Below, piece after piece: positions 10,477 through 36,605 of a stretch of 53,063 bases of DNA. How positions within the stretch are numbered: the stretch's first letter is position 1; the number at the start of each line of letters is the position of its first letter. The notes beneath the pieces are model-generated. The model saw nothing but the letters and a program-made list of their open reading frames with translations, was not told the origin of the DNA and did no database searches. Position numbers and translations under genes: made by a program. This DNA is from Octopus bimaculoides (lineage: Eukaryota), in contig NC_069006.1 of the NCBI RefSeq assembly GCF_001194135.2, positions 7,584,834-7,637,896 of the forward strand, in the 5' to 3' direction.

Positions 10477-12570
10477 ATGAAAAGACTGCGTTCTAAAGCT
10501 AACCCAGCAGACGACCCAGACTACGTGACCAAAGCCTATTTTCCAGGAGTGTCTAACGTCCTGGAGATCAAAGCGGATAACCGCAAGAAAGAACGTCAGA
10601 CAGTAAAATCGAGTCCCTACTATGTTAAGAAGTGCAAGACAAACCCTGGGCGGGGTGGTTGTACTCAAAGCTCTTACAAAGATTTGAAGTTAGGTAAAAA
10701 ATATCAAAGAGAAAGCCAGAAAAATCTTGACGCTCAGCTGAAAAGTTTCCAACGACCTGAAACCAATTTAATGAAAAATGACGCCGAAGTTGATAAAGGC
10801 AAGTTGTGTGGTGATAATGAAAATCTTGGTGGGACGATAGAAAGCTCATTTGATAAACAGCCGATCGATCTGTGCCAGGCTGAAATGGATGTTAGGCAAA
10901 ATTCGAAACGTATCAGGTTATTGGTTGAAGAAGAAACTAGCAATAATTGCAATAAAAACAACTCAGAAGTGCCATTGATTCGTATTAAACAGGAAGAAGT
11001 GAGCAACGAAGAGTTGATTCGGAACGAGGTGTTTGACATTGTTAACTATCAAGAGAAATATAATATATGTTCAACGTTAAAATTTGAACTTCCGGAATTA
11101 AATTCCAACAATTTGAAACCAGCAACATCTCCGCCGCCGCCTGATATGTCGTGCGATTACATCTCAAACGCTAGCGATAAGAACTTCTTCAATTCCGGCA
11201 ATATTCCAAATTGTCTACCACATTCAGAACAAGAGGAATCTAAATTTTTTGACGTTCAACCCAATTTGACGATAATTCCAGAAGAAGATAAGTTAAAAGA
11301 TAACATTTACGAGGTTGAAATTGAACAAAATGAATTAGAAAGCAAAACAGCATCACAATATGGCCACAAAGATTCTTGCCTTCGGTTGTTGCTTTCAGGA
11401 GAGAATGAAGAGAGCCAACATAACACAATGATGAATTCCTGCACCAATCCATCCAATCCTTCGCCGGGATTGGCACCAATGCTTTCCGTCTCATCTCTTC
11501 CCACTCAACAGAATTTCAACTACGTACCCGTCACGCAAAATTTTCCTGCTGGTCAAGATTTCTCGAATTTGAATCTTACCAAAACCAATCAAGAAATGCC
11601 GTGGATTCCTCTTGGACTTCCCACTCAATCACCATCATCCGTCAGTCCAGACTGGAGCACTCATTACCTGTGTCCAACTTCTCAGCTCTCATACAACACG
11701 CCCTTACCTTCTTATCCGCATCCTTTCCCCTTAGGAAATCCTCCTGGAAGGTGTTGGAATCAAAACGTACCACCAACCTATAAGCAAAGCATCCAATCTC
11801 CAAACAATTCCTTCTCCGACCTCAATGTCATGTCAGGGCCCTTCGTGAAAACTCCTCAAAACTGTTACCTTCTGCATTCCATGTTGCACCCTTCCACATC
11901 CTATTCTTTTCTACCCAATCAAAAGCCATTTGCAACTAATTTAAATATTCAAGATTTACCCTCTAAGTCGAAATCCTATCAGAATGTCAATGATTTGCCT
12001 GTCAGTATGCCATGCGCAGGGCCACCCACTTCCAAAAAACTACCGTTTACGGAAAACGAAATGCAAGAGGATTGCCTTTTAAAAGAAAATTCCAAGTCGC
12101 AAGACAATTTTTGCATCACCATTTTAGCAGCAGATGTAAAACTCATCGACCACCACAGAACCAAAGATTACTTTCCCGTCTTCCAAAACCATCAAATCCC
12201 AAAGACTGTATCGGGTTCACCGAAAGTTGAATTTATTCTGAGCAAGTATATAGATTTTTTGCTGCTGGAAAACGAAGGCATCACCGAAATATCGAAAGCA
12301 TTCACACCAGCGACGCGACTGTTCTCCGACGAGGACGAATACGTACTGGATGTGGCTGACAAAAGAATTAATTTCCCTTCCATCAAATTCGTAGAATTTA
12401 TGCAAAGACATTTTCCCGACATCAACATGCAGTCGATTAATTTCTTGATTGGTCCGTTTCACTTCTCATCAGCTCAGAATCTGGATACCAATGAAAAAAT
12501 CATGCAAGATTGCTTCTTCCACTTCCAACAGCTCAGAACCAGAATGAGAGAAAACCTAGCCACGTATTGA
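10477..12570 (+). CDS. Intronless 697-aa protein of unknown family: basic N-terminus, Ser/Pro/Gln/Asn-rich middle, predicted globular C-terminal ~150 aa; probably nuclear
   Basis: 2094-nt uninterrupted ORF free of microsatellites in a repeat-rich window; AAAATG start context with an in-frame TGA at -6; a TTTCAG at 10462-10467 could be the acceptor of a 5'UTR intron; KRLRSK/RKKER basic patches; IKQE SUMO consensus. Confidence 0.8.
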   Translation: MKRLRSKANPADDPDYVTKAYFPGVSNVLEIKADNRKKERQTVKSSPYYVKKCKTNPGRGGCTQSSYKDLKLGKKYQRESQKNLDAQLKSFQRPETNLMKNDAEVDKGKLCGDNENLGGTIESSFDKQPIDLCQAEMDVRQNSKRIRLLVEEETSNNCNKNNSEVPLIRIKQEEVSNEELIRNEVFDIVNYQEKYNICSTLKFELPELNSNNLKPATSPPPPDMSCDYISNASDKNFFNSGNIPNCLPHSEQEESKFFDVQPNLTIIPEEDKLKDNIYEVEIEQNELESKTASQYGHKDSCLRLLLSGENEESQHNTMMNSCTNPSNPSPGLAPMLSVSSLPTQQNFNYVPVTQNFPAGQDFSNLNLTKTNQEMPWIPLGLPTQSPSSVSPDWSTHYLCPTSQLSYNTPLPSYPHPFPLGNPPGRCWNQNVPPTYKQSIQSPNNSFSDLNVMSGPFVKTPQNCYLLHSMLHPSTSYSFLPNQKPFATNLNIQDLPSKSKSYQNVNDLPVSMPCAGPPTSKKLPFTENEMQEDCLLKENSKSQDNFCITILAADVKLIDHHRTKDYFPVFQNHQIPKTVSGSPKVEFILSKYIDFLLLENEGITEISKAFTPATRLFSDEDEYVLDVADKRINFPSIKFVEFMQRHFPDINMQSINFLIGPFHFSSAQNLDTNEKIMQDCFFHFQQLRTRMRENLATY

Positions 12571-15965: not shown

Positions 15966-16059
15966 ATATATATGTATATGTATGTATGCATGATCATTGC
16001 TGATAAGTTGAGTTATAACTGACTCTACCAACATGAGATCGACATTGACTCATGAGGCC

Positions 16060-16450
16060 CGTGAAAGATTTCAGTGTTTGCCGTTAAAATTCACGTTTTG
16101 GGGCCTGATGCTTAGGCCTGTCAGATGGAAGATCATTATGCTTTTTGAAATGTTTGTGAGTTTCTGGCAGACTTTGCCACATACATCACAGGTAAGCAGG
16201 TCTGCAATAACGAATTGAACATAATCTGTTTTTAGGTTGTCTATGTGGTTCCAGAGATGGTTTTGAAGTCCTGCGTTTGGCAAACATATTTGGTCACACT
16301 CATAGCAAACAAACTGAGGACCAGCTAATTCGGCTTCCTCTCTTTACTGGCAGCTTTTTTGGTCTTTGTCCAGCTTAATAATTACTTAGCATATAATGAG
16401 CAATACCCTTCGTATATTTGTTTTCTCCACTTGTTTCTGTTGCCAGTTTT
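16060..16450 (-). mobile_element. RTE-clade LINE 3' end with C2H2-like fingers, degenerate
   Basis: Minus frames read NRNKWRKQIYEG...ERK, then CYECDQICLPNAGLQNHLWNH (C-x2-C-x12-H-x3-H) and a second CDVCGKVC...H. Confidence 0.6.
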
Positions 16451-16633
16451 TATTTCCTATTGCTATCTCATCTGGAGAAATAACAAACCAATAAAGTAAA
16501 CTATCTCTGCTGTTTCTCAACTGAATGAAAACAATTCACTCCCTGCGTATGTTGATTAAAACAGGTGCATAAAAGGGACAATGGTCAAAAGTTATGAACA
16601 TTACAACTAAGATGAGAACATTGGTCAAGAATT

Positions 16634-16819
16634 CAGTTCTATATTTAAGAGATGAGGAATTATGTACATTATTTACATTATTTACATTTGACGGATATTT
16701 GTCCTCATCTTGTTTGTTGTTAACACATTTCAGCTGATATACCCTCCGACCTTCATCAGGTGTCTTGGGGAAATTTCGAACCTGGGTTCTCATTCCTAAG
16801 GTATTCTTCAATGTTGTTG

Positions 16820-16872
<53 letters not shown>

Positions 16873-17061
16873 GTTCAGGTCACTGCTTGGAATCGAACTC
16901 GGAATCTTGAGGTTAGTAGCTCTTAACCACTACGCCATAAGCCTGTGGGCTTAACCACTATGCCATAGCCCACGGGCATATGGTGTAGTGGTTAAGAGCG
17001 CGGGCTACTAACCCCAAGATTCCGAGTTTGATTCCAAGCAGTGACCTGAACAATAATAATG

Positions 17062-17092
<31 letters not shown>

Positions 17093-17311
17093 CAACAACA
17101 TTGAAGAATACCTTAGGAATGAGAACCAAGGTTCGAAATTTTCCCAAGACACCTGATGAAGGCTGGAGGGTATATCAGCCAAAACGGTGTGTTATCAAGA
17201 AACAAGATGAGGACAAATATCCGTCAAATGTACATAATGTAAATAATGTACATAATTCCTCATCTCTTAAATATAGAACTTGGGTTCTCATTCCTAAGGT
17301 ATTTTTCAATG

Positions 17312-17359
<48 letters not shown>

Positions 17360-17504
17360 TCACTGCCTGGAATCGAACTTGGAATCTTGGGGTTAGTAGA
17401 CCACACTCTTAACCACTACACCATATGCCTTATGAAGTCTGGAGGATATATCAGCCAAAACATTGTGTTAACAACAAACAAATATCTGTCAAATGTAAAT
17501 AATG
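16634..17504. mobile_element. Palindromic tRNA-headed, hammerhead-tailed Penelope-associated element (locus 1; arms -,+,-,+)
   Basis: Inverted arms 16635-~16945 / ~16975-17280 (AGTTCTATATTTAAGAGATGAGG ... CCTCATCTCTTAAATATAGAACT), plus partial third and fourth arms; A-box TGGYGTAGTGG, B-box GAGTTYGATTCC; 12-bp direct repeat TGGTCAAGAATT at 16622-16633 and 17505-17516. Confidence 0.85.
17148..17193 (+). ncRNA. Minimal type-I hammerhead ribozyme motif (mutated copy)
   Basis: GACAC-CTGATGA-A-GGCTG-loop-CAGCC-(A)AAAC-GGT-GTGTT; G12 changed to A by CpG-type decay. Confidence 0.7.
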
Positions 17505-17624
17505 TGGTCAAGAATTGTTTGAAACAGTTACTCAAAAGTCACTCCAATGCATATATCTGGTTTTGAAAATAAGCTTTTCATTATGACGATTTCTCATCTT
17601 AGAAATTTAAACCAAAATTCTTAC

Positions 17625-17954: not shown

Positions 17955-18311
17955 ATATGGCATTTTAAAGCGAGAACGGTTCATGTTACTGAGGGTGCCC
18001 TAGGTATGAGAAAAGGATGTCAAAAACATCTAGATAAGATCCCAGAAGAACCACATCTCAGAGAAATCCAAAAGATTGTGCTGACAAATACTGCCCACAT
18101 CCTTAGAAAAACCCTACCCATTTAAATATCTGTGTAGTATTACATGAAGATAGTGTGCAACTGCCCCTGCCACTTCCCATCCCCAAGCTTTCAGTCAAAC
18201 TGTAACATTTCTTATCCTTCACTCGCTCTAGGATATTGGGTGTGTCTCAGCAAGTGGTTGTAACAAACATGCAAATTAAAAGTAAATAATAATGATAATT
18301 ATTATAATAAT
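17955..18311 (+). mobile_element. R4/Dong-clade LINE extreme 3' end with TAA tail
   Basis: IWHFKARTVHVTEGALGMRKGCQKHLDKIPEEPHLREIQKIVLTNTAHILRKTLPI*, then a 3'UTR ending in AATAATAATGATAAT. Confidence 0.85.
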
Positions 18312-32450: not shown

Positions 32451-32710
32451 AGAGAGAGTGATACACAGACAGACAGAGACAGTGAGGTAAATGAGTAGAT
32501 ACATGAATAAATAGATACATCCTCATATATAGACAGATAACATTGTAAATGATTACTAACACAAAATGAGTTTTTGATATTTCTGATGAAGTCAAAACAT
32601 TGAAACTGTTGTCCAGTAACAGCAAATAATTTTGTGTTGGTTATCATTAGTTTGCTTAAAGTGCTCTGCAACATTCTTGTTGATTTTCCCTTTATATGTA
32701 TGTTCTTTCT

Positions 32711-33038
32711 TACATTATTTACATTTGACAAATATTTGTCCTCATCTTGTTTGTTGTTAACCGTTTCGGCTGATATACCCTCCAAGCCTTCATCAGGTGT
32801 CTTGGGGGAATTTCGAACCTGGGTTCTCATTCCTAAGGTATTTTTCGATGTTATTATTATCATCATCATCATCATCATCATCATTATCATCGTTATTGTT
32901 GTTGTTGTTGTTATTGCTATTATTGTTATTGTTCAGGTCACTGCTTGGAATCAAACTCAGAATCTTGGGGTTAGTAGCTCATGCTCTTAACCACTATGCC
33001 ATATGCCTGTGGGCATATGGCGCAGTGGTTAATACTAC

Positions 33039-33077
<39 letters not shown>

Positions 33078-33262
33078 CAACATTGAAAAATACCTTAGGA
33101 ATGAGAACTCAGGTTCAAAATTTCCCCAAGACACCCGAAGAAGGCTGGAGGGTACATCAGCTGAAATGTTGTGTTAACAACAAACAAGATGATGACAAAT
33201 GTCTGCCAAATGTAAATAATGTAAATAATGTACATAATTCCTCATCTCTTAAATATAGAACT
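32711..33262. mobile_element. Palindromic tRNA-headed, hammerhead-tailed element (locus 2)
   Basis: Arms meet at CCATATGCC-TGTG-GGCATATGG (loop 33008-33011); direct repeat GTATGTT(C/G)TTTCT at 32698-32710 and 33263-33275. Confidence 0.85.
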
Positions 33263-34471
33263 GTATGTTGTTTCTTGTTTTTAATTATTTAAACGCTTCC
33301 TCTGAAGAAGGAGCTGGTTTCTAACAATGATACAAAGCTCCAGCATTGGAATGTAGATAATGAAAACAATATCACATTTTAAACTTGAGAAAAGTCTTGC
33401 ATACTTTTACTGTTCCACTTACAGATTGTATTTACAATGTGCGAGTTGACTGGCTCATTTCTTTTCAGAAAACACAAGCTTATCTAGACTGGCATTTATT
33501 CCCAAAAGGAAGTGCATCAATTATTATTAGTATAAATGTGAATTTATTATCTGGACAGAAGCTCACGGTTTCAAAGTAGTTGTCCAAAGTTTTCCTCTCT
33601 CCTTCTCTCTCTCTCTCTTTGATTTTCAGAGATTATGTATGTATGTATACATGTATGTATGTATGTATGTATGTATGTATGTATATGAGTAGTAGAAAAT
33701 ATGGATTCAGAAGAACATGAGACTTTCACAGTAAGCTCCGCATTCGGAATTGGCTATCAGTGTACGTAGTAACCAATTTCCATGTAATGGAATAAGTTCG
33801 TGTAACTGAGAATCTTGGAAATCTGAACAACATTTTTTTATCCACGAGAAGGAAATAAGGCACAAAGCCAGGAAGTAACAGAGGTTAATATAGATTTACT
33901 TTGCCATGTGGCTTTTATATGATTACAGCTGTTTCGTAACTTTCATGTTGTATTATTAATTTCAGAATGCAAAATTTTACATCAATATATATGCTCACAT
34001 ATATATACATTTTACATCAAGATATATATACATTTACATCAAGATATATGTTCAGCATTATACAATACTACTGCATATTCACAAATTTATGCAAATAGAG
34101 AACATAACTTATGAGATCACTGTAACTTCATTATCTTGAAGAGGATGGAGAAATTGCTGTAGCATTGCCCATGGAATCCAAACGCTATGTCTGCTGTAGA
34201 ATGTACAGCTGTGCTAACCAGTACACCAAGGTAACATTACAGCTTTGACCGTCCCAATTAAGAGATTTAAACTAAGTAGTTAAAAGCTCAGAAGGTAAAA
34301 ATAGACAAATTGCTGCTAAGCATTTTGTCCACGTGCTAACGATTCTGACAGCTTCCTGCCTTTATGACAATAATAATATACCCAAGGCACACAGAGCTGC
34401 GCTTGGTAGTGCAGTGAAAGCATGCAATAAAAATAAGACTACTGAATAATAATAACAACAACAACAACAAC

Positions 34472-35563: not shown

Positions 35564-36113
35564 GATGCAGTACCAGGCAGTGGCTCTCATGGCCTCTGAT
35601 CTTAATTGATTGGAAATGTTATCATGTACATTGTTTTGTCTTGGTATAAAAGATGGGCTACAGCAAATATTCTGCTCAATACCACAGATTTGCTTGTCAG
35701 TTGTTTGACCTTAACCAGTTGAGCATTCCCCTTAGTGGCTGACGATATGTGCATCTCTGACCATGAGCATAAGTAGTGGGGGAGCATCATAGCCATGTGT
35801 TGAGAGGAGTTCTTTGGGGTTTGACTAATTCACCTTTGGAAACATGGGTGTTTTGCTCAACATCCTTAAACGAACCTTATTCAGGGACCTTTTGAGTGGA
35901 ATGGGCTACTCGACCTGAAGAAAATTCTAACTGGTCCCCACCTGTGAGGTCATGCGCTGTTTATCTTGATATGAGATCACCATATCGCACACATATGGTT
36001 GTGATGCATGTGCCTGGTGTACTCTTATTAGACGGGTAGTCATGATGGAGATACTGGGCACTGTATATTTGTACCCCAGTGTCACTTTGTTGCCATGCAC
36101 TGCTCTCTCACTC
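35564..36113 (+). mobile_element. Family G non-autonomous element within (AAT)n
   Basis: Homolog of 8397-8924; (AAT)n at 35455-35556 and 36114-36160. Confidence 0.8.
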
Positions 36114-36158
<45 letters not shown>

Positions 36159-36605
36159 TATAATGATAATGATAATGATTATGATGATCTACCCACCAGT
36201 GTTTGGATTCTTCTTTTCTTAAACTTCTCACATCTTTGCATCATATCCCGGCGATNNNNNNNNNNNNNNNNNNNNNNNNNNNNNNNNNNNNNNNNNNNNN
36301 NNNNNNNNNNNNNNNNNNNNNNNNNNNNNNNNNNNNNNNNNNNNNNNNNNNNNNNNNNNNNNNNNNNNNNNNNNNNNNNNNNNNNNNNNNNNNNNNNNNN
36401 NNNNNNNNNNNNNNNNNNNNNNNNNNNNNNNNNNNNNNNNNNNNNNNNNNNNNNNNNNNNNNNNNNNNNNNNNNNNNNNNNNNNNNNNNNNNNNNNNNNN
36501 NNNNNNNNNNNNNNNNNNNNNNNNNNNNNNNNNNNNNNNNNNNNNNNNNNNNNNNNNNNNNNNNNNNNNNNNNNNNNNNNNNNNNNNNNNNNNNNNNNNN
36601 NNNNN

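What the first reader, a model, noticed from the sequence alone, without database searches (positions are those of the whole stretch)
16634..17504. tRNA-headed, hammerhead-tailed palindromic retroposon: candidate Penelope-mobilised SINE
Seen: each arm is [tRNA-like head with A-box TGGYGTAGTGG and B-box GAGTTYGATTCC] - (AAT)n - [~180 bp tail containing a minimal hammerhead]. Arms are fused head-to-head around a tiny loop, and the whole -,+,-,+ composite is bounded by a 12-bp direct repeat (TGGTCAAGAATT). Known: Penelope-like elements carry minimal hammerheads in their terminal repeats, often insert with inverted terminal segments, and make variable-length TSDs; SINEs typically borrow the 3' end of a LINE partner. 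Inference: a Pol III SINE that borrowed a Penelope terminus rather than a LINE terminus. I am not aware of this partnership being well described.
Basis: partly seen in the sequence, partly recalled or inferred. Interest (0 to 1): 0.9.

Follow-up and report, generated by a model that had tools for sequence, protein, structure and literature searches.

The report
Octopus SINE with Penelope-type hammerhead tail
This is an old, mutated insertion of a roughly 300-base octopus jumping element that pairs a tRNA-style promoter with a 3' end carrying the hallmarks of Penelope-like retrotransposons, so it was probably copied by a Penelope enzyme rather than by a LINE, although that partner could not be found here.

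Summary
Window 16634-17504 is a four-segment (-,+,-,+) composite of one ~300-nt repeat unit, flanked by an exact 12-bp duplication, TGGTCAAGAATT. The unit is a 78-nt head with A and B boxes, then (AAT)n, then a 183-nt tail.

The window comes from an Octopus genome, probably O. bimaculoides. It holds two more insertions:
- a second head-to-head palindrome at 32712-33261, with a 15-bp duplication;
- a 5'-truncated tail at 52506-52647.

The consensus tail meets every descriptor of the Penelope-type minimal hammerhead. No single copy does, mostly because of CpG decay, and Rfam finds nothing.

The head has tRNA-like promoter boxes at tRNA spacing but no detectable cloverleaf.

Three further features match published Penelope-like element (PLE) insertion signatures:
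- inverted double-ended copies made in a single integration;
- a 32-nt terminal extension at only one end of each composite;
- target duplications of variable length.

All six head copies start at the same nucleotide, about 10 nt upstream of box A, and the unit contains no T4 stretch. Both fit a Pol III transcript rather than a fragment of a longer PLE.

O. vulgaris and O. sinensis share one internal junction, so the insertion is ancient.

No autonomous PLE partner could be retrieved, so mobilisation by a PLE remains an inference. My verdict is a new variant of a known kind, of moderate interest.

The parts
16622..16633 (.). Left copy of the target-site duplication, TGGTCAAGAATT
   Evidence: It is a 12/12 match to 17505-17516 (family D8).
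16634..16943 (-). Arm A, a full unit in minus orientation. Tail 16634-16813 includes the 32-nt terminal extension at 16634-16665. (ATT)n is at 16814-16871 and the head at 16872-16943.
   Evidence: BLAST to the consensus gives tail 1-183 and head 1-78. Identity to the consensus is 97-98%.
16722..16764 (-). Hammerhead remnant of arm A. CUGAUGA and GAAA are present, C11.1 and C15.2 are changed to U, and 3 nt are deleted at helix III.
   Evidence: Read and aligned.
16944..16974 (.). Centre of the A/B palindrome: TGTG, then a 23-nt extra minus-strand copy of head positions 1-~21 (16948-16970), then CACG.
   Evidence: (family D3).
16975..17281 (+). Arm B, a full unit in plus orientation. Head 16975-17052 carries box A TGGTGTAGTGG and box B AGTTTGATTCC. 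(AAT)n is at 17053-17098 and the tail at 17099-~17281, ending in the long terminus.
   Evidence: 95.6-97.4% identity to the consensus.
17148..17193 (+). Hammerhead remnant of arm B, GACAC-CUGAUGA-A-GGCUGG...UCAGCC-AAAACGG-UGUGUU, with G12->A and U16.1->G.
17269..17429 (-). Segment C, the inverted 5' part of one unit: tail 1-43 (17269-17311), (ATT)n, and head 17354-17429. Its first ~13 nt overlap B's terminus through imperfect microhomology (AAATATAGAAC versus AAATTTCGAAC).
17428..17504 (+). Segment D, the direct 3' part of the same unit: tail 54-~151, ending at the short terminus, with a decayed hammerhead at 17428-17469. It joins C at head position 1 through a CC microhomology.
   Evidence: The same junction is present in O. 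vulgaris (L001 18269-18381) and O. sinensis (L002).
17505..17516 (.). Right copy of the target-site duplication, TGGTCAAGAATT
   Evidence: family D8. The O. vulgaris orthologue reads TGGTGAAGAATT.
32697..32711 (.). Left target-site duplication of the second insertion, TGTATGTTCTTTCTT
   Evidence: It matches 33262-33276 at 14 of 15 positions.
32712..33007 (-). Second insertion, minus arm: tail 1-~144 ending at the short terminus, an impure (ATT/ATC)n run, and the head at 32930-33007. The hammerhead core CTGATGAAGGCTTGGAGGGTATATCAGCCGAAAC lies at 32763-32796.
33008..33011 (.). 4-nt spacer TGTG at the head-to-head junction of the second insertion
33012..33261 (+). Second insertion, plus arm: head 1-21 only (internal deletion), (AAT)n, and the tail at 33081-33261 ending in the long terminus.
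33262..33276 (.). Right target-site duplication of the second insertion, TGTATGTTGTTTCTT
52506..52647 (+). Third insertion, a 5'-truncated monomer covering tail 29-182 with the long terminus. Its hammerhead at 52532-52564 is the best preserved: the core is intact and 16.2 is G->A.

Best explanation
This is a non-autonomous, SINE-like retroposon family of octopus. Each unit is about 300 nt and has four parts.
- A 5' end CAC(R)GGCATATGG.
- A 78-nt head with a type-2 Pol III promoter, with box A at +11 and box B at +55.
- An internal (AAT)n run.
- A 183-nt 3' module. It holds a Penelope-type minimal type-I hammerhead, GACAC/CUGAUGA/A/GGCUGG-loop-UCAGCC/GAAACGU/U|GUGUU, followed by two alternative 3' termini 32 nt apart.

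**Inferred mechanism**
1. Pol III transcribes the unit from the internal promoter through to a downstream genomic T-run.
2. The 3' module is recognised by the RT/GIY-YIG protein of an octopus PLE.
3. That protein nicks both target strands a variable 12-15 bp apart.
4. Each 3'-OH primes reverse transcription at one of the two internal start sites. This is why one end of an insertion carries the 32-nt extension and the other does not.
5. The two cDNAs run to the RNA 5' end and are joined head to head. Extra template jumps at microhomologies give the more complex -,+,-,+ product at 16634-17504, all within one target duplication.
6. The hammerhead is probably carried along as part of the PLE RNA module. 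It would need dimerisation or protein assistance to cut and is unlikely to process the SINE itself, because no copy begins at the predicted cleavage site.

**Inferred origin.** A 5'-truncated PLE 3' fragment landed in the (AAT)n tail of an older tRNA-type SINE.

**Shown:** the anatomy, the target duplications, recurrence, the age of the insertion, and the consensus hammerhead.
**Inferred:** Pol III transcription, the PLE partner, and the priming model.
For: **Host genome**
- The host is Octopus.

**Independent insertions**
- There are three independent insertions, and the two composites have target duplications of 12 and 15 bp that enclose the whole structure.

**Hammerhead**
- Shuffled sequence gave 0 hits in 200 shuffles of the window and 0.03 per shuffle of 97 kb with a relaxed descriptor.
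- These are the extra traits listed for PLE hammerheads in PMC4209133.
- Differences from the core are largely CpG-type, and window CpG o/e is 0.59.
- U16.1 is supported by five copies (A, c2R, c3, D, and the copy behind P0007) and compatibly by P0006; B and c2L read G.

**Terminal extension**
- The short terminus is found in D, the minus arm of the second insertion and the O. vulgaris D. The long terminus (+32 nt) is found in A, B, the plus arm of the second insertion and the third insertion.
- Each composite has the extension at only one outer end.
- This matches the 30-40-bp one-sided PLE 'tail' (PMC8557442). It also matches the two RT start sites and the cleavage and extension of both strands shown in vitro (PMC11167929).

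**Inverted copies**
- An inverted adjacent copy is a stated PLE hallmark.

**Fixed 5' end**
- All six head copies begin at GGC(A/T)TATGG, within a 4-nt spacer, 10-11 nt upstream of box A.
- The consensus unit has no TTTT.
- The A and B boxes sit at tRNA spacing, with 4 matches against 0 in shuffles.

**Origin scenario**
- Other retroposons in the window end in (AAT)n.
- PLE endonuclease prefers ATT and microsatellites.
Against: - No autonomous PLE with this 3' module was found, and there is no RT or GIY-YIG coding sequence in the 97 kb available. Searches with tail-derived peptides found only two O. bimaculoides gene models, or nothing.
- Rfam hammerhead models give no hit, and no individual copy in the window passes the descriptor.
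- The head is not recognisable as a tRNA.
- The consensus rests on only about 6-8 copies.
- The short terminus lies in a 9-nt tandem motif, (AAATAATGT)2-3, which is also reminiscent of the 3' ends of some LINE clades.
- No direct tandem (pLTR-like) arrangement was seen.
- The one-sided extension was observed in only two composites.
Confidence: 0.65

Rival explanations
1. It is an ordinary LINE-dependent tRNA-type SINE, with for example an RTE or CR1 partner. Its tail happens to contain a hammerhead-like string, and the inverted structures come from twin priming or later rearrangement.
For: - LINEs dominate octopus repeats, and a LINE fragment with an (AAT)n end lies in the window.
- The short terminus sits in a short tandem motif.
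- The C+D segment has exactly the twin-priming geometry known from L1 (the L1 comparison is from my own knowledge).
- The partner is unknown.
Against: - The consensus shows all the non-descriptor traits of PLE hammerheads, with 0 hits in shuffles.
- Two of three insertions are double-ended palindromes with full-length arms inside one target duplication. This needs two templates and priming from both strands.
- The one-sided 32-nt extension matches a feature described as unique to PLEs.
Confidence: 0.15
2. These are just 5'-truncated pieces of an autonomous PLE. The 'head' would then be an ordinary internal part of its pLTR, and the A/B-box resemblance would be incidental.
For: - Cervera & de la Pena (PMC4209133) judged most dispersed minimal hammerheads to be truncated PLEs.
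- They also saw pairs 100-700 bp apart on opposite strands.
- The head is not a recognisable tRNA.
Against: - Six of six head copies end at the same nucleotide instead of at scattered truncation points. That point is where a Pol III start is expected, ~10 nt upstream of a perfect box A.
- Box A matches 11/11 and box B 10/11, at a spacing of 44 nt.
- The sense strand has no T4.
- The internal (AAT)n separates two modules.
Confidence: 0.12
3. It is a retrozyme-like element: hammerhead-processed circular RNA is the transposition intermediate.
For: It carries a type-I hammerhead and is non-coding and short. Animal retrozymes have been proposed as non-autonomous PLE derivatives.
Against: - There are no direct tandem repeats, so no two sense hammerheads lie in one transcript.
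- The ends of the unit are fixed rather than circularly permuted.
- No copy starts or ends at the predicted cleavage site after tail position 90. The 5' ends seen are head position 1, tail 29 and tail 54.
Confidence: 0.03

Closest known systems
Minimal type-I hammerheads of Penelope-like elements and their dispersed genomic copies (Cervera & de la Pena 2014, PMC4209133; Lunse et al. 2017)
   Same: - The core boxes are the same.
- Helix I is short (5 bp) and helix II long (6 bp).
[quoted passage not shown]
- Helix III is reduced to a palindrome (ACGU), implying action as a dimer.
- Pairs occur on opposite strands a few hundred bp apart.
   Different: Here the motif sits in a ~300-nt unit that starts with a Pol III-type A/B-box head, not in a pLTR next to an RT ORF. 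No sequence homology to a PLE was shown.
Schistosome Sm-alpha / Sj-alpha SINE-like retroposons bearing a hammerhead (Ferbeyre et al. 1998; Laha et al. 2000; cited in PMC8490949 and PMC3409120)
   Same: They are short, non-coding, SINE-like repeats that carry a type-I hammerhead, which makes them the precedent for a 'SINE with hammerhead'. Their Pol III-type promoter boxes are from my own recollection of those papers, not checked here.
   Different: - Sm-alpha has a canonical, active hammerhead and occurs largely in tandem arrays giving multimeric transcripts.
- The octopus unit has the PLE-type minimal motif and is dispersed with target duplications.
- It forms inverted rather than tandem copies and has the one-sided terminal extension.
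- No sequence comparison was possible.
Animal non-LTR retrozymes (Cervera & de la Pena 2020, PMC7229834; Li, Clavereau & Pollet 2026 preprint)
   Same: They are non-autonomous, carry hammerheads, and have been proposed to depend on PLE machinery.
   Different: Retrozymes are direct tandem repeats processed into 170-400-nt circular RNAs. They have no described Pol III head, and the 2026 work reports relatedness to pLTRs. Here there is no tandem arrangement and the ends are fixed.
Non-autonomous Chlamys PLE derivatives such as MRC1 in Chlamydomonas (Craig et al. 2021, PMC8557442)
   Same: They are non-coding elements sharing the 3' end of autonomous PLEs and showing PLE-type insertion structures.
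   Different: They come from a different kingdom and a different PLE clade that lacks canonical hammerheads, they have no small-RNA-type promoter head, and they form pLTRs or head-to-tail arrays.
Classical tRNA-derived SINEs with LINE-derived tails, including the octopus OK/OR1/OR2 families (Ohshima & Okada 1994, cited in PMC4824008 and PMC4758252)
   Same: They share the modular head-body-tail design, A/B boxes, target duplications, and dependence on an RT supplied in trans.
   Different: The tail here carries PLE rather than LINE hallmarks, and the insertions are palindromic. Whether this family equals one of the named octopus families could not be checked.
L1 twin-priming inversions (Ostertag & Kazazian 2001; from my own knowledge)
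   Same: Segment C+D has the same geometry: the 5' part is inverted, the 3' part is direct, a small deletion (tail 44-53) lies at the junction, and there is microhomology.
   Different: The A/B pair and the second insertion are full duplicated arms, not a single inverted unit.

Membership tests
SINE (type-2 Pol III promoter, 'tRNA-derived') | Internal A and B boxes at tRNA-like spacing near the 5' end | tested here: met
   In the consensus, TGGCGTAGTGG matches box A 11/11 and AGTTCGATTCC matches box B 10/11, with starts 44 nt apart. The pattern is found 4 times, against 0 in 100 shuffles.
SINE (type-2 Pol III promoter, 'tRNA-derived') | Head recognisably homologous to a tRNA (cloverleaf) | tested here: not met
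   ARAGORN finds nothing, even at relaxed thresholds. Rfam finds no tRNA at E<=10 on 91 nt. The fold z-score is +1.3. By eye, only a D-arm-like and an anticodon-like hairpin remain.
SINE (type-2 Pol III promoter, 'tRNA-derived') | Short, non-coding, dispersed copies flanked by target-site duplications, with a defined 5' end | tested here: met
   There are three loci. Target duplications are 12/12 and 14/15. Six head copies start at the same nucleotide. Two further copies lie inside O. bimaculoides gene models.
SINE (type-2 Pol III promoter, 'tRNA-derived') | 3' end shared with an autonomous retrotransposon of the same genome | not testable with these tools
   No octopus genome-wide DNA search is available. 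The indirect attempts failed.
SINE (type-2 Pol III promoter, 'tRNA-derived') | Transcription by RNA polymerase III | not testable with these tools
   Support is indirect only: there is no T4 in the sense consensus, and the 5' end lies ~10 nt upstream of box A.
PLE-type minimal hammerhead | CUGANGA and GAAA cores with helices I and II in type-I order and a cleavable H17 | tested here: met
   The consensus tail passes the descriptor at positions 50-95 (helix I 5 bp, helix II 6 bp, U17). Shuffles gave 0 hits. Individual copies fail.
PLE-type minimal hammerhead | [quoted passage not shown] | tested here: met
   A bulged A, a G-C closing pair and ACGU are all present in the consensus. The criteria come from PMC4209133. 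U16.1 is supported by 5-6 of 8 copies.
PLE-type minimal hammerhead | Match to curated hammerhead covariance models | tested here: not met
   There is no Rfam hit at the gathering threshold or at E<=10. This would not be surprising for motifs without a helix III, though I did not check it against the models.
PLE-type minimal hammerhead | Self-cleavage, as a dimer or with protein assistance | not testable with these tools
   This needs an in vitro assay.
Penelope-like element insertion (non-autonomous derivative) | Inverted copy adjacent at the 5' end, forming complex structures within one insertion | tested here: met
   Two of three loci are head-to-head composites enclosed by a single target duplication. 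The hallmark is as stated in PMC8557442.
Penelope-like element insertion (non-autonomous derivative) | Optional 30-40-bp 'tail' extension at only one end of the insertion unit | tested here: met
   The 32-nt extension ACATAATTCCTCATCTCTTAAATATAGAACTG is present at the left end only of 16634-17504 and at the right end only of 32712-33261. The sample is just two composites.
Penelope-like element insertion (non-autonomous derivative) | Partial tandem copies forming pseudo-LTRs | tested here: not met
   No direct tandem of the unit occurs at any of the three loci.
Penelope-like element insertion (non-autonomous derivative) | Sequence homology to an autonomous element encoding RT plus GIY-YIG | not testable with these tools
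   No PLE coding sequence is present in the window, L001 or L002, and none could be retrieved.
Animal non-LTR retrozyme | Direct tandem repeats, each with a hammerhead, giving unit-length circular RNA | tested here: not met
   Only inverted arrangements were seen. The unit ends are fixed and none lies at the cleavage site. Circular RNA itself was not testable.

The most novel reading that the evidence does not exclude
This is a true Pol III-driven SINE lineage that parasitises a Penelope-like element instead of a LINE.
- It was born when a 183-nt PLE 3' module inserted into the (AAT)n tail of an older tRNA-type SINE.
- Its double-ended palindromic insertions, with one long and one short terminus, are in vivo footprints of the both-strand cleavage and dual internal RT start sites so far seen only in vitro for an Anolis PLE.
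- The dimer-only hammerhead may be retained because it is part of the RNA surface that the PLE protein binds, or because it pairs in trans with the PLE's own RNA.
Probability: 0.45. Interest if true: 0.7.

Novelty: new variant of a known kind. Interest (0 to 1): 0.55.

Why it matters
**Current picture.** SINEs are textbook parasites of LINEs. PLEs are the least understood retrotransposon class, and their non-autonomous dependants are only now being proposed (retrozymes, MRC1).

**What a PLE-dependent Pol III SINE would add**
- It would add a third kind of RT host for small-RNA-promoter elements.
- It would define a compact cis-module of about 180 nt that is sufficient for PLE mobilisation, directly usable in the new in vitro PLE system.
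- It would supply natural evidence for priming from both target strands and for the origin of the PLE 'tail'.
- SINEs are the largest repeat class in octopus genomes, so knowing which RT drives which family matters for interpreting octopus genome expansion.

**If the partner turns out to be a LINE,** the find is an ordinary SINE with an odd tail.

Tried and rejected
- **Standard RNA detectors.** ARAGORN on the window and on the consensus head at relaxed thresholds found no tRNA. Rfam at the gathering threshold and at E<=10 on 1151 nt and on 91 nt gave no tRNA or hammerhead, only spurious miRNA-precursor hits caused by the palindrome.
- **More family copies or a PLE partner via proteins.** I translated the open frame of the tail and searched the 5.8-billion-protein collection. 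This returned only two O. bimaculoides gene models. The frame starting at the AUG inside CUGAUGA, by analogy with the Anolis PLE whose ORF starts in the hammerhead, had no candidates.
- **DNA for those gene models.** It was not retrievable.
- **Exact-pattern scans.** Scans of metagenome and viral contig collections with the hammerhead region found nothing.
- **PLE coding sequence nearby.** Six-frame ORF listing and an RT/GIY-YIG motif grep of the window plus 44 kb of O. vulgaris and O. sinensis found none.
- **Empty site.** I looked for the empty target site in O. vulgaris and O. sinensis. Both instead share the C/D junction and have lost the rest through a ~1.4-kb deletion, so no empty site was obtained.
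- **Snap-back model.** I considered self-priming of one cDNA for the palindromes. I rejected it as the sole model because the two arms of one palindrome carry different 3' termini, so one arm cannot simply be a copy of the other.
- **Assembly artefact.** I rejected this because the arms differ by 2-8% from the consensus with distinct indels, and a long-read O. vulgaris assembly shares a junction.
- **Retrozyme reading.** Rejected because there are no tandems and no ends at the cleavage site.
Full report
**Source and setting.** The window is eukaryotic: 34% G+C, CpG observed/expected 0.59, and 5.2 kb of assembly gaps. Its one long ORF (10477-12570, 697 aa) clusters at 95% identity with uncharacterised proteins of Octopus sinensis and O. 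vulgaris. A third cluster member, with hidden name, is the window's own product. Two O. bimaculoides gene models contain peptides derived from the element studied here. The window is therefore Octopus, most probably O. bimaculoides.

**Checking the observation.** The 12-mer TGGTCAAGAATT occurs at 16622-16633 and again at 17505-17516, bracketing exactly the reported interval. I built a consensus unit from the seven repeat segments in the window and mapped it back. The interval resolves into these pieces:

| Segment | Strand | Coordinates | Content |
|---|---|---|---|
| A | - | 16634-16943 | full unit |
| spacer | . | 16944-16974 | TGTG, a 23-nt extra head fragment, CACG |
| B | + | 16975-~17281 | full unit |
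| C | - | ~17269-17429 | head, repeat run, and only the first 43 nt of the tail |
| D | + | 17428-17504 | tail 54 to ~151, no head |

- The refinement is that A/B is a true palindrome, whereas C+D is one single unit with its 5' part inverted. That is the geometry known from L1 twin priming (my own knowledge).
- The family recurs twice more in the window.
  - A second palindrome lies at 32712-33261. Its heads are joined across a 4-nt TGTG spacer, and it is flanked by TGTATGTT[C/G]TTTCTT (14/15).
  - A 5'-truncated tail lies at 52506-52647.
- The box A...box B pattern and the CUGAUGA...CCGAAAC pattern each have zero occurrences in 100 dinucleotide-preserving shuffles.

**The hammerhead.** Rfam reports no hammerhead at any threshold tried, and no individual copy passes a structural descriptor.
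- The consensus tail does pass: GACAC | CUGAUGA | A | GGCUGG-AGGGUAUA-UCAGCC | GAA-ACGU-U^GUGUU. Hits in shuffles were 0 of 200, and 0.03 per shuffle with a relaxed descriptor.
- Beyond the core boxes it shows the four traits that Cervera & de la Pena list as emergent properties of PLE minimal hammerheads:
  - a G10.1-C11.1 pair;
  - a long helix II with a short helix I;
  - a palindromic 15.2-16.2 with no loop 3, so helix III can form only between two molecules.
- The copies deviate largely by CpG-type transitions, for example CCGAAACG to CCAAAACA or CTGAAATG. This fits the CpG depletion of the genome.
- The weakest position, U16.1, is supported by 5-6 of 8 independent copies once the two gene-model peptides are counted.
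- I therefore accept a PLE-type minimal hammerhead in the family's ancestor. All three copies inside 16634-17504 are now dead.

**The head.**
- Box A is a perfect match to TRGCNNAGTGG. Box B is 10/11. Their starts are 44 nt apart, as in tRNA genes.
- There is no detectable cloverleaf. ARAGORN fails even when relaxed, Rfam finds nothing on the 91-nt head, and the fold is no better than shuffles.
- 'tRNA-like' is therefore justified only as 'type-2 Pol III promoter-like'.
- Two facts argue that the head is nevertheless the true start of a short transcription unit.
  - All six head copies (A, the extra fragment, B, C and both arms of the second insertion) begin at the same GGC(A/T)TATGG, preceded at most by CAC(R). 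This places the 5' end 10-11 nt upstream of box A.
  - The ~300-nt consensus has no T4 on the sense strand.
- Random 5' truncation of a longer PLE would not give such a sharp common boundary.

**Insertion signatures.** There are two kinds of 3' end.
- The short terminus stops in the (AAATAATGT) repeats at about tail position 151. It is found in D, the minus arm of the second insertion and the O. vulgaris copy of D.
- The long terminus adds 32 nt, ACATAATTCCTCATCTCTTAAATATAGAACTG. It is found in A, B, the plus arm of the second insertion and the third copy.
- In both composites, one outer end is long and the other short.
- Frangieh et al. showed in vitro that a PLE protein cleaves and extends both target strands. 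It initiates reverse transcription at two adjacent internal sites whose spacing corresponds to that tail, and it prefers ATT targets.
- The octopus insertions are what that mechanism predicts. Each nicked strand primes on a template at one of two sites, both cDNAs run to the RNA 5' end, and they are joined head to head.
- The extra joints in 16634-17504 lie at microhomologies. B/C uses AAATATAGAAC against AAATTTCGAAC, and C/D uses CC, as expected for template jumps.
- Because a single target duplication encloses each composite, each is best read as one integration event.
- No 5' end coincides with the predicted ribozyme cut (after tail position 90), so the ribozyme does not seem to shape the copies.

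**Age.** I fetched the orthologous regions of O. vulgaris and O. sinensis through the neighbouring gene.
- Both retain the unique C/D junction (inverted head start abutting the tail at the hammerhead), segment D with the short terminus, and the right target duplication (TGGTGAAGAATT).
- Both lack about 1.4 kb corresponding to window ~15990-17405, next to a (TA)n run.
- The insertion therefore predates the split of these species. The palindromic part was later deleted in the vulgaris/sinensis lineage, so no empty site is available.
- Copies are 92-98% identical to the small-sample consensus.

**Origin.** The internal (AAT)n separates two unrelated modules. Other retroposons in the window end in (AAT)n, including a LINE fragment with a zf-RVT remnant. 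PLE nucleases favour ATT and microsatellites. A simple scenario, which is inference only, is that a truncated PLE 3' fragment landed in the (AAT)n tail of an older SINE, and read-through Pol III transcripts then acquired PLE mobility.

**What is missing.** I could not reach an autonomous octopus PLE.
- No RT or GIY-YIG coding sequence lies in the 97 kb available.
- Peptide searches from two tail frames found no PLE protein.
- Pattern scans of metagenome and viral collections were empty.
- Repbase, Dfam and SINEBase are not available here.
- The PLE partnership therefore rests on structural hallmarks, not homology. I put it at about 0.65.
- The rivals are a LINE-dependent SINE (0.15), plain PLE fragments (0.12) and a retrozyme-like element (0.03).

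**Comparison and novelty.**
- The hammerhead belongs, by its tested features, with PLE minimal hammerheads.
- The unit works like a SINE and meets the promoter, size, dispersal and target-duplication criteria. It fails the 'recognisable tRNA' criterion.
- It is not a retrozyme, because there are no tandems and the ends are fixed.
- Precedents exist. Schistosome Sm-alpha/Sj-alpha are SINE-like repeats with hammerheads. Animal retrozymes have been argued to be non-autonomous PLE derivatives. Chlamys PLEs have non-autonomous dependants.
- In the searchable library I found no paper describing a Pol III-headed SINE with a PLE-type 3' module, or hammerheads in octopus repeats. That search is incomplete.
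- I rate it a new variant of a known kind, with interest 0.55.

Noticed in passing
window 10477-12570 (+): This is a single-exon 697-aa ORF with no Pfam domain, about 95% identical to uncharacterised proteins of O. sinensis and O. vulgaris and to transcript-like Logan contigs. It is a conserved octopus-specific gene of unknown function.
   Followed up: partly
window ~15990-17405 versus L001 18251-18270 and L002 ~18194-18221: O. vulgaris and O. sinensis lack about 1.4 kb that is present here: the left flank, arms A and B, and most of C. The breakpoint abuts a (TA)n run. The missing left flank includes a C2H2 zinc-finger-like ORF fragment at 16074-16343 (-).
   Followed up: partly
window 8366-10091 (-) and 35651-36160 (+): This is a non-LTR retrotransposon fragment with a weak zf-RVT hit at 9606-10091 whose 3' end is an (AAT)n run. 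A second copy of its last ~490 bp lies at 35651-36160. (AAT)n-tailed retroposons therefore coexist with the studied family.
   Followed up: partly
window 50428-50486 (-); 44080-44470 (-); L001 12787-12837, 13867-13930, 17125-17176; L002 941-989: These are heads of other octopus tRNA-type SINE families. An abundant one reads GGCACAGGAGTGGCTGTGTGGTAAGTAGC...GGTTCCGGGTTCAGTCCC. The copy at 44401-44464 has box B GAGTTTGATTCC, identical to that of arm B (the consensus reads GAGTTCGATTCC). They are only weakly similar to the head studied here (nhmmer E ~0.01-0.04).
   Followed up: partly
proteins P0006 and P0007 (O. bimaculoides gene models, not in the window): A 51-aa 'uncharacterized protein' is translated entirely from a copy of the tail. 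About 25 residues near the N-terminus of a 'dystrobrevin beta isoform X1' model also come from the tail and stop around CAAATGTAAAT, where the GTAAAT motif might act as a cryptic splice donor (not checked). This is either exonisation or an annotation artefact.
   Followed up: no
tail of every copy, e.g. window 17099-17279 (+) and 16634-16813 (-): One reading frame of the AT-rich tail (LKNTLGMRTQVRNFPKTPDEGWRVYQPKRCVNNKQDEDKYPSNVNNVNNVHNSSSLKYRT) is open in all copies but has no homologues other than the two gene models above. It is probably chance inherited from the consensus.
   Followed up: partly
tail positions 33-43 versus 172-182, and 106-114 versus 157-165 (e.g. window 17131-17141 / 17270-17280; 17204-17212 / 17255-17263): The 32-nt terminal extension is complementary to two upstream tail segments: GUUCGAAAUUU/AAAUAUAGAAC at 9 of 11 positions, and AGAUGAGGA/UCCUCAUCU at 9 of 9. 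Hairpins could therefore enclose the hammerhead and the short RT start site. The first pairing coincides with the B/C junction. There are too few copies to test covariation.
   Followed up: partly
whole window: There are 5217 N in many gaps, most adjacent to (TA)n, (CA)n or (GA)n microsatellites. This is typical of a short-read scaffold, so repeat structures next to gaps should be treated with caution.
   Followed up: no
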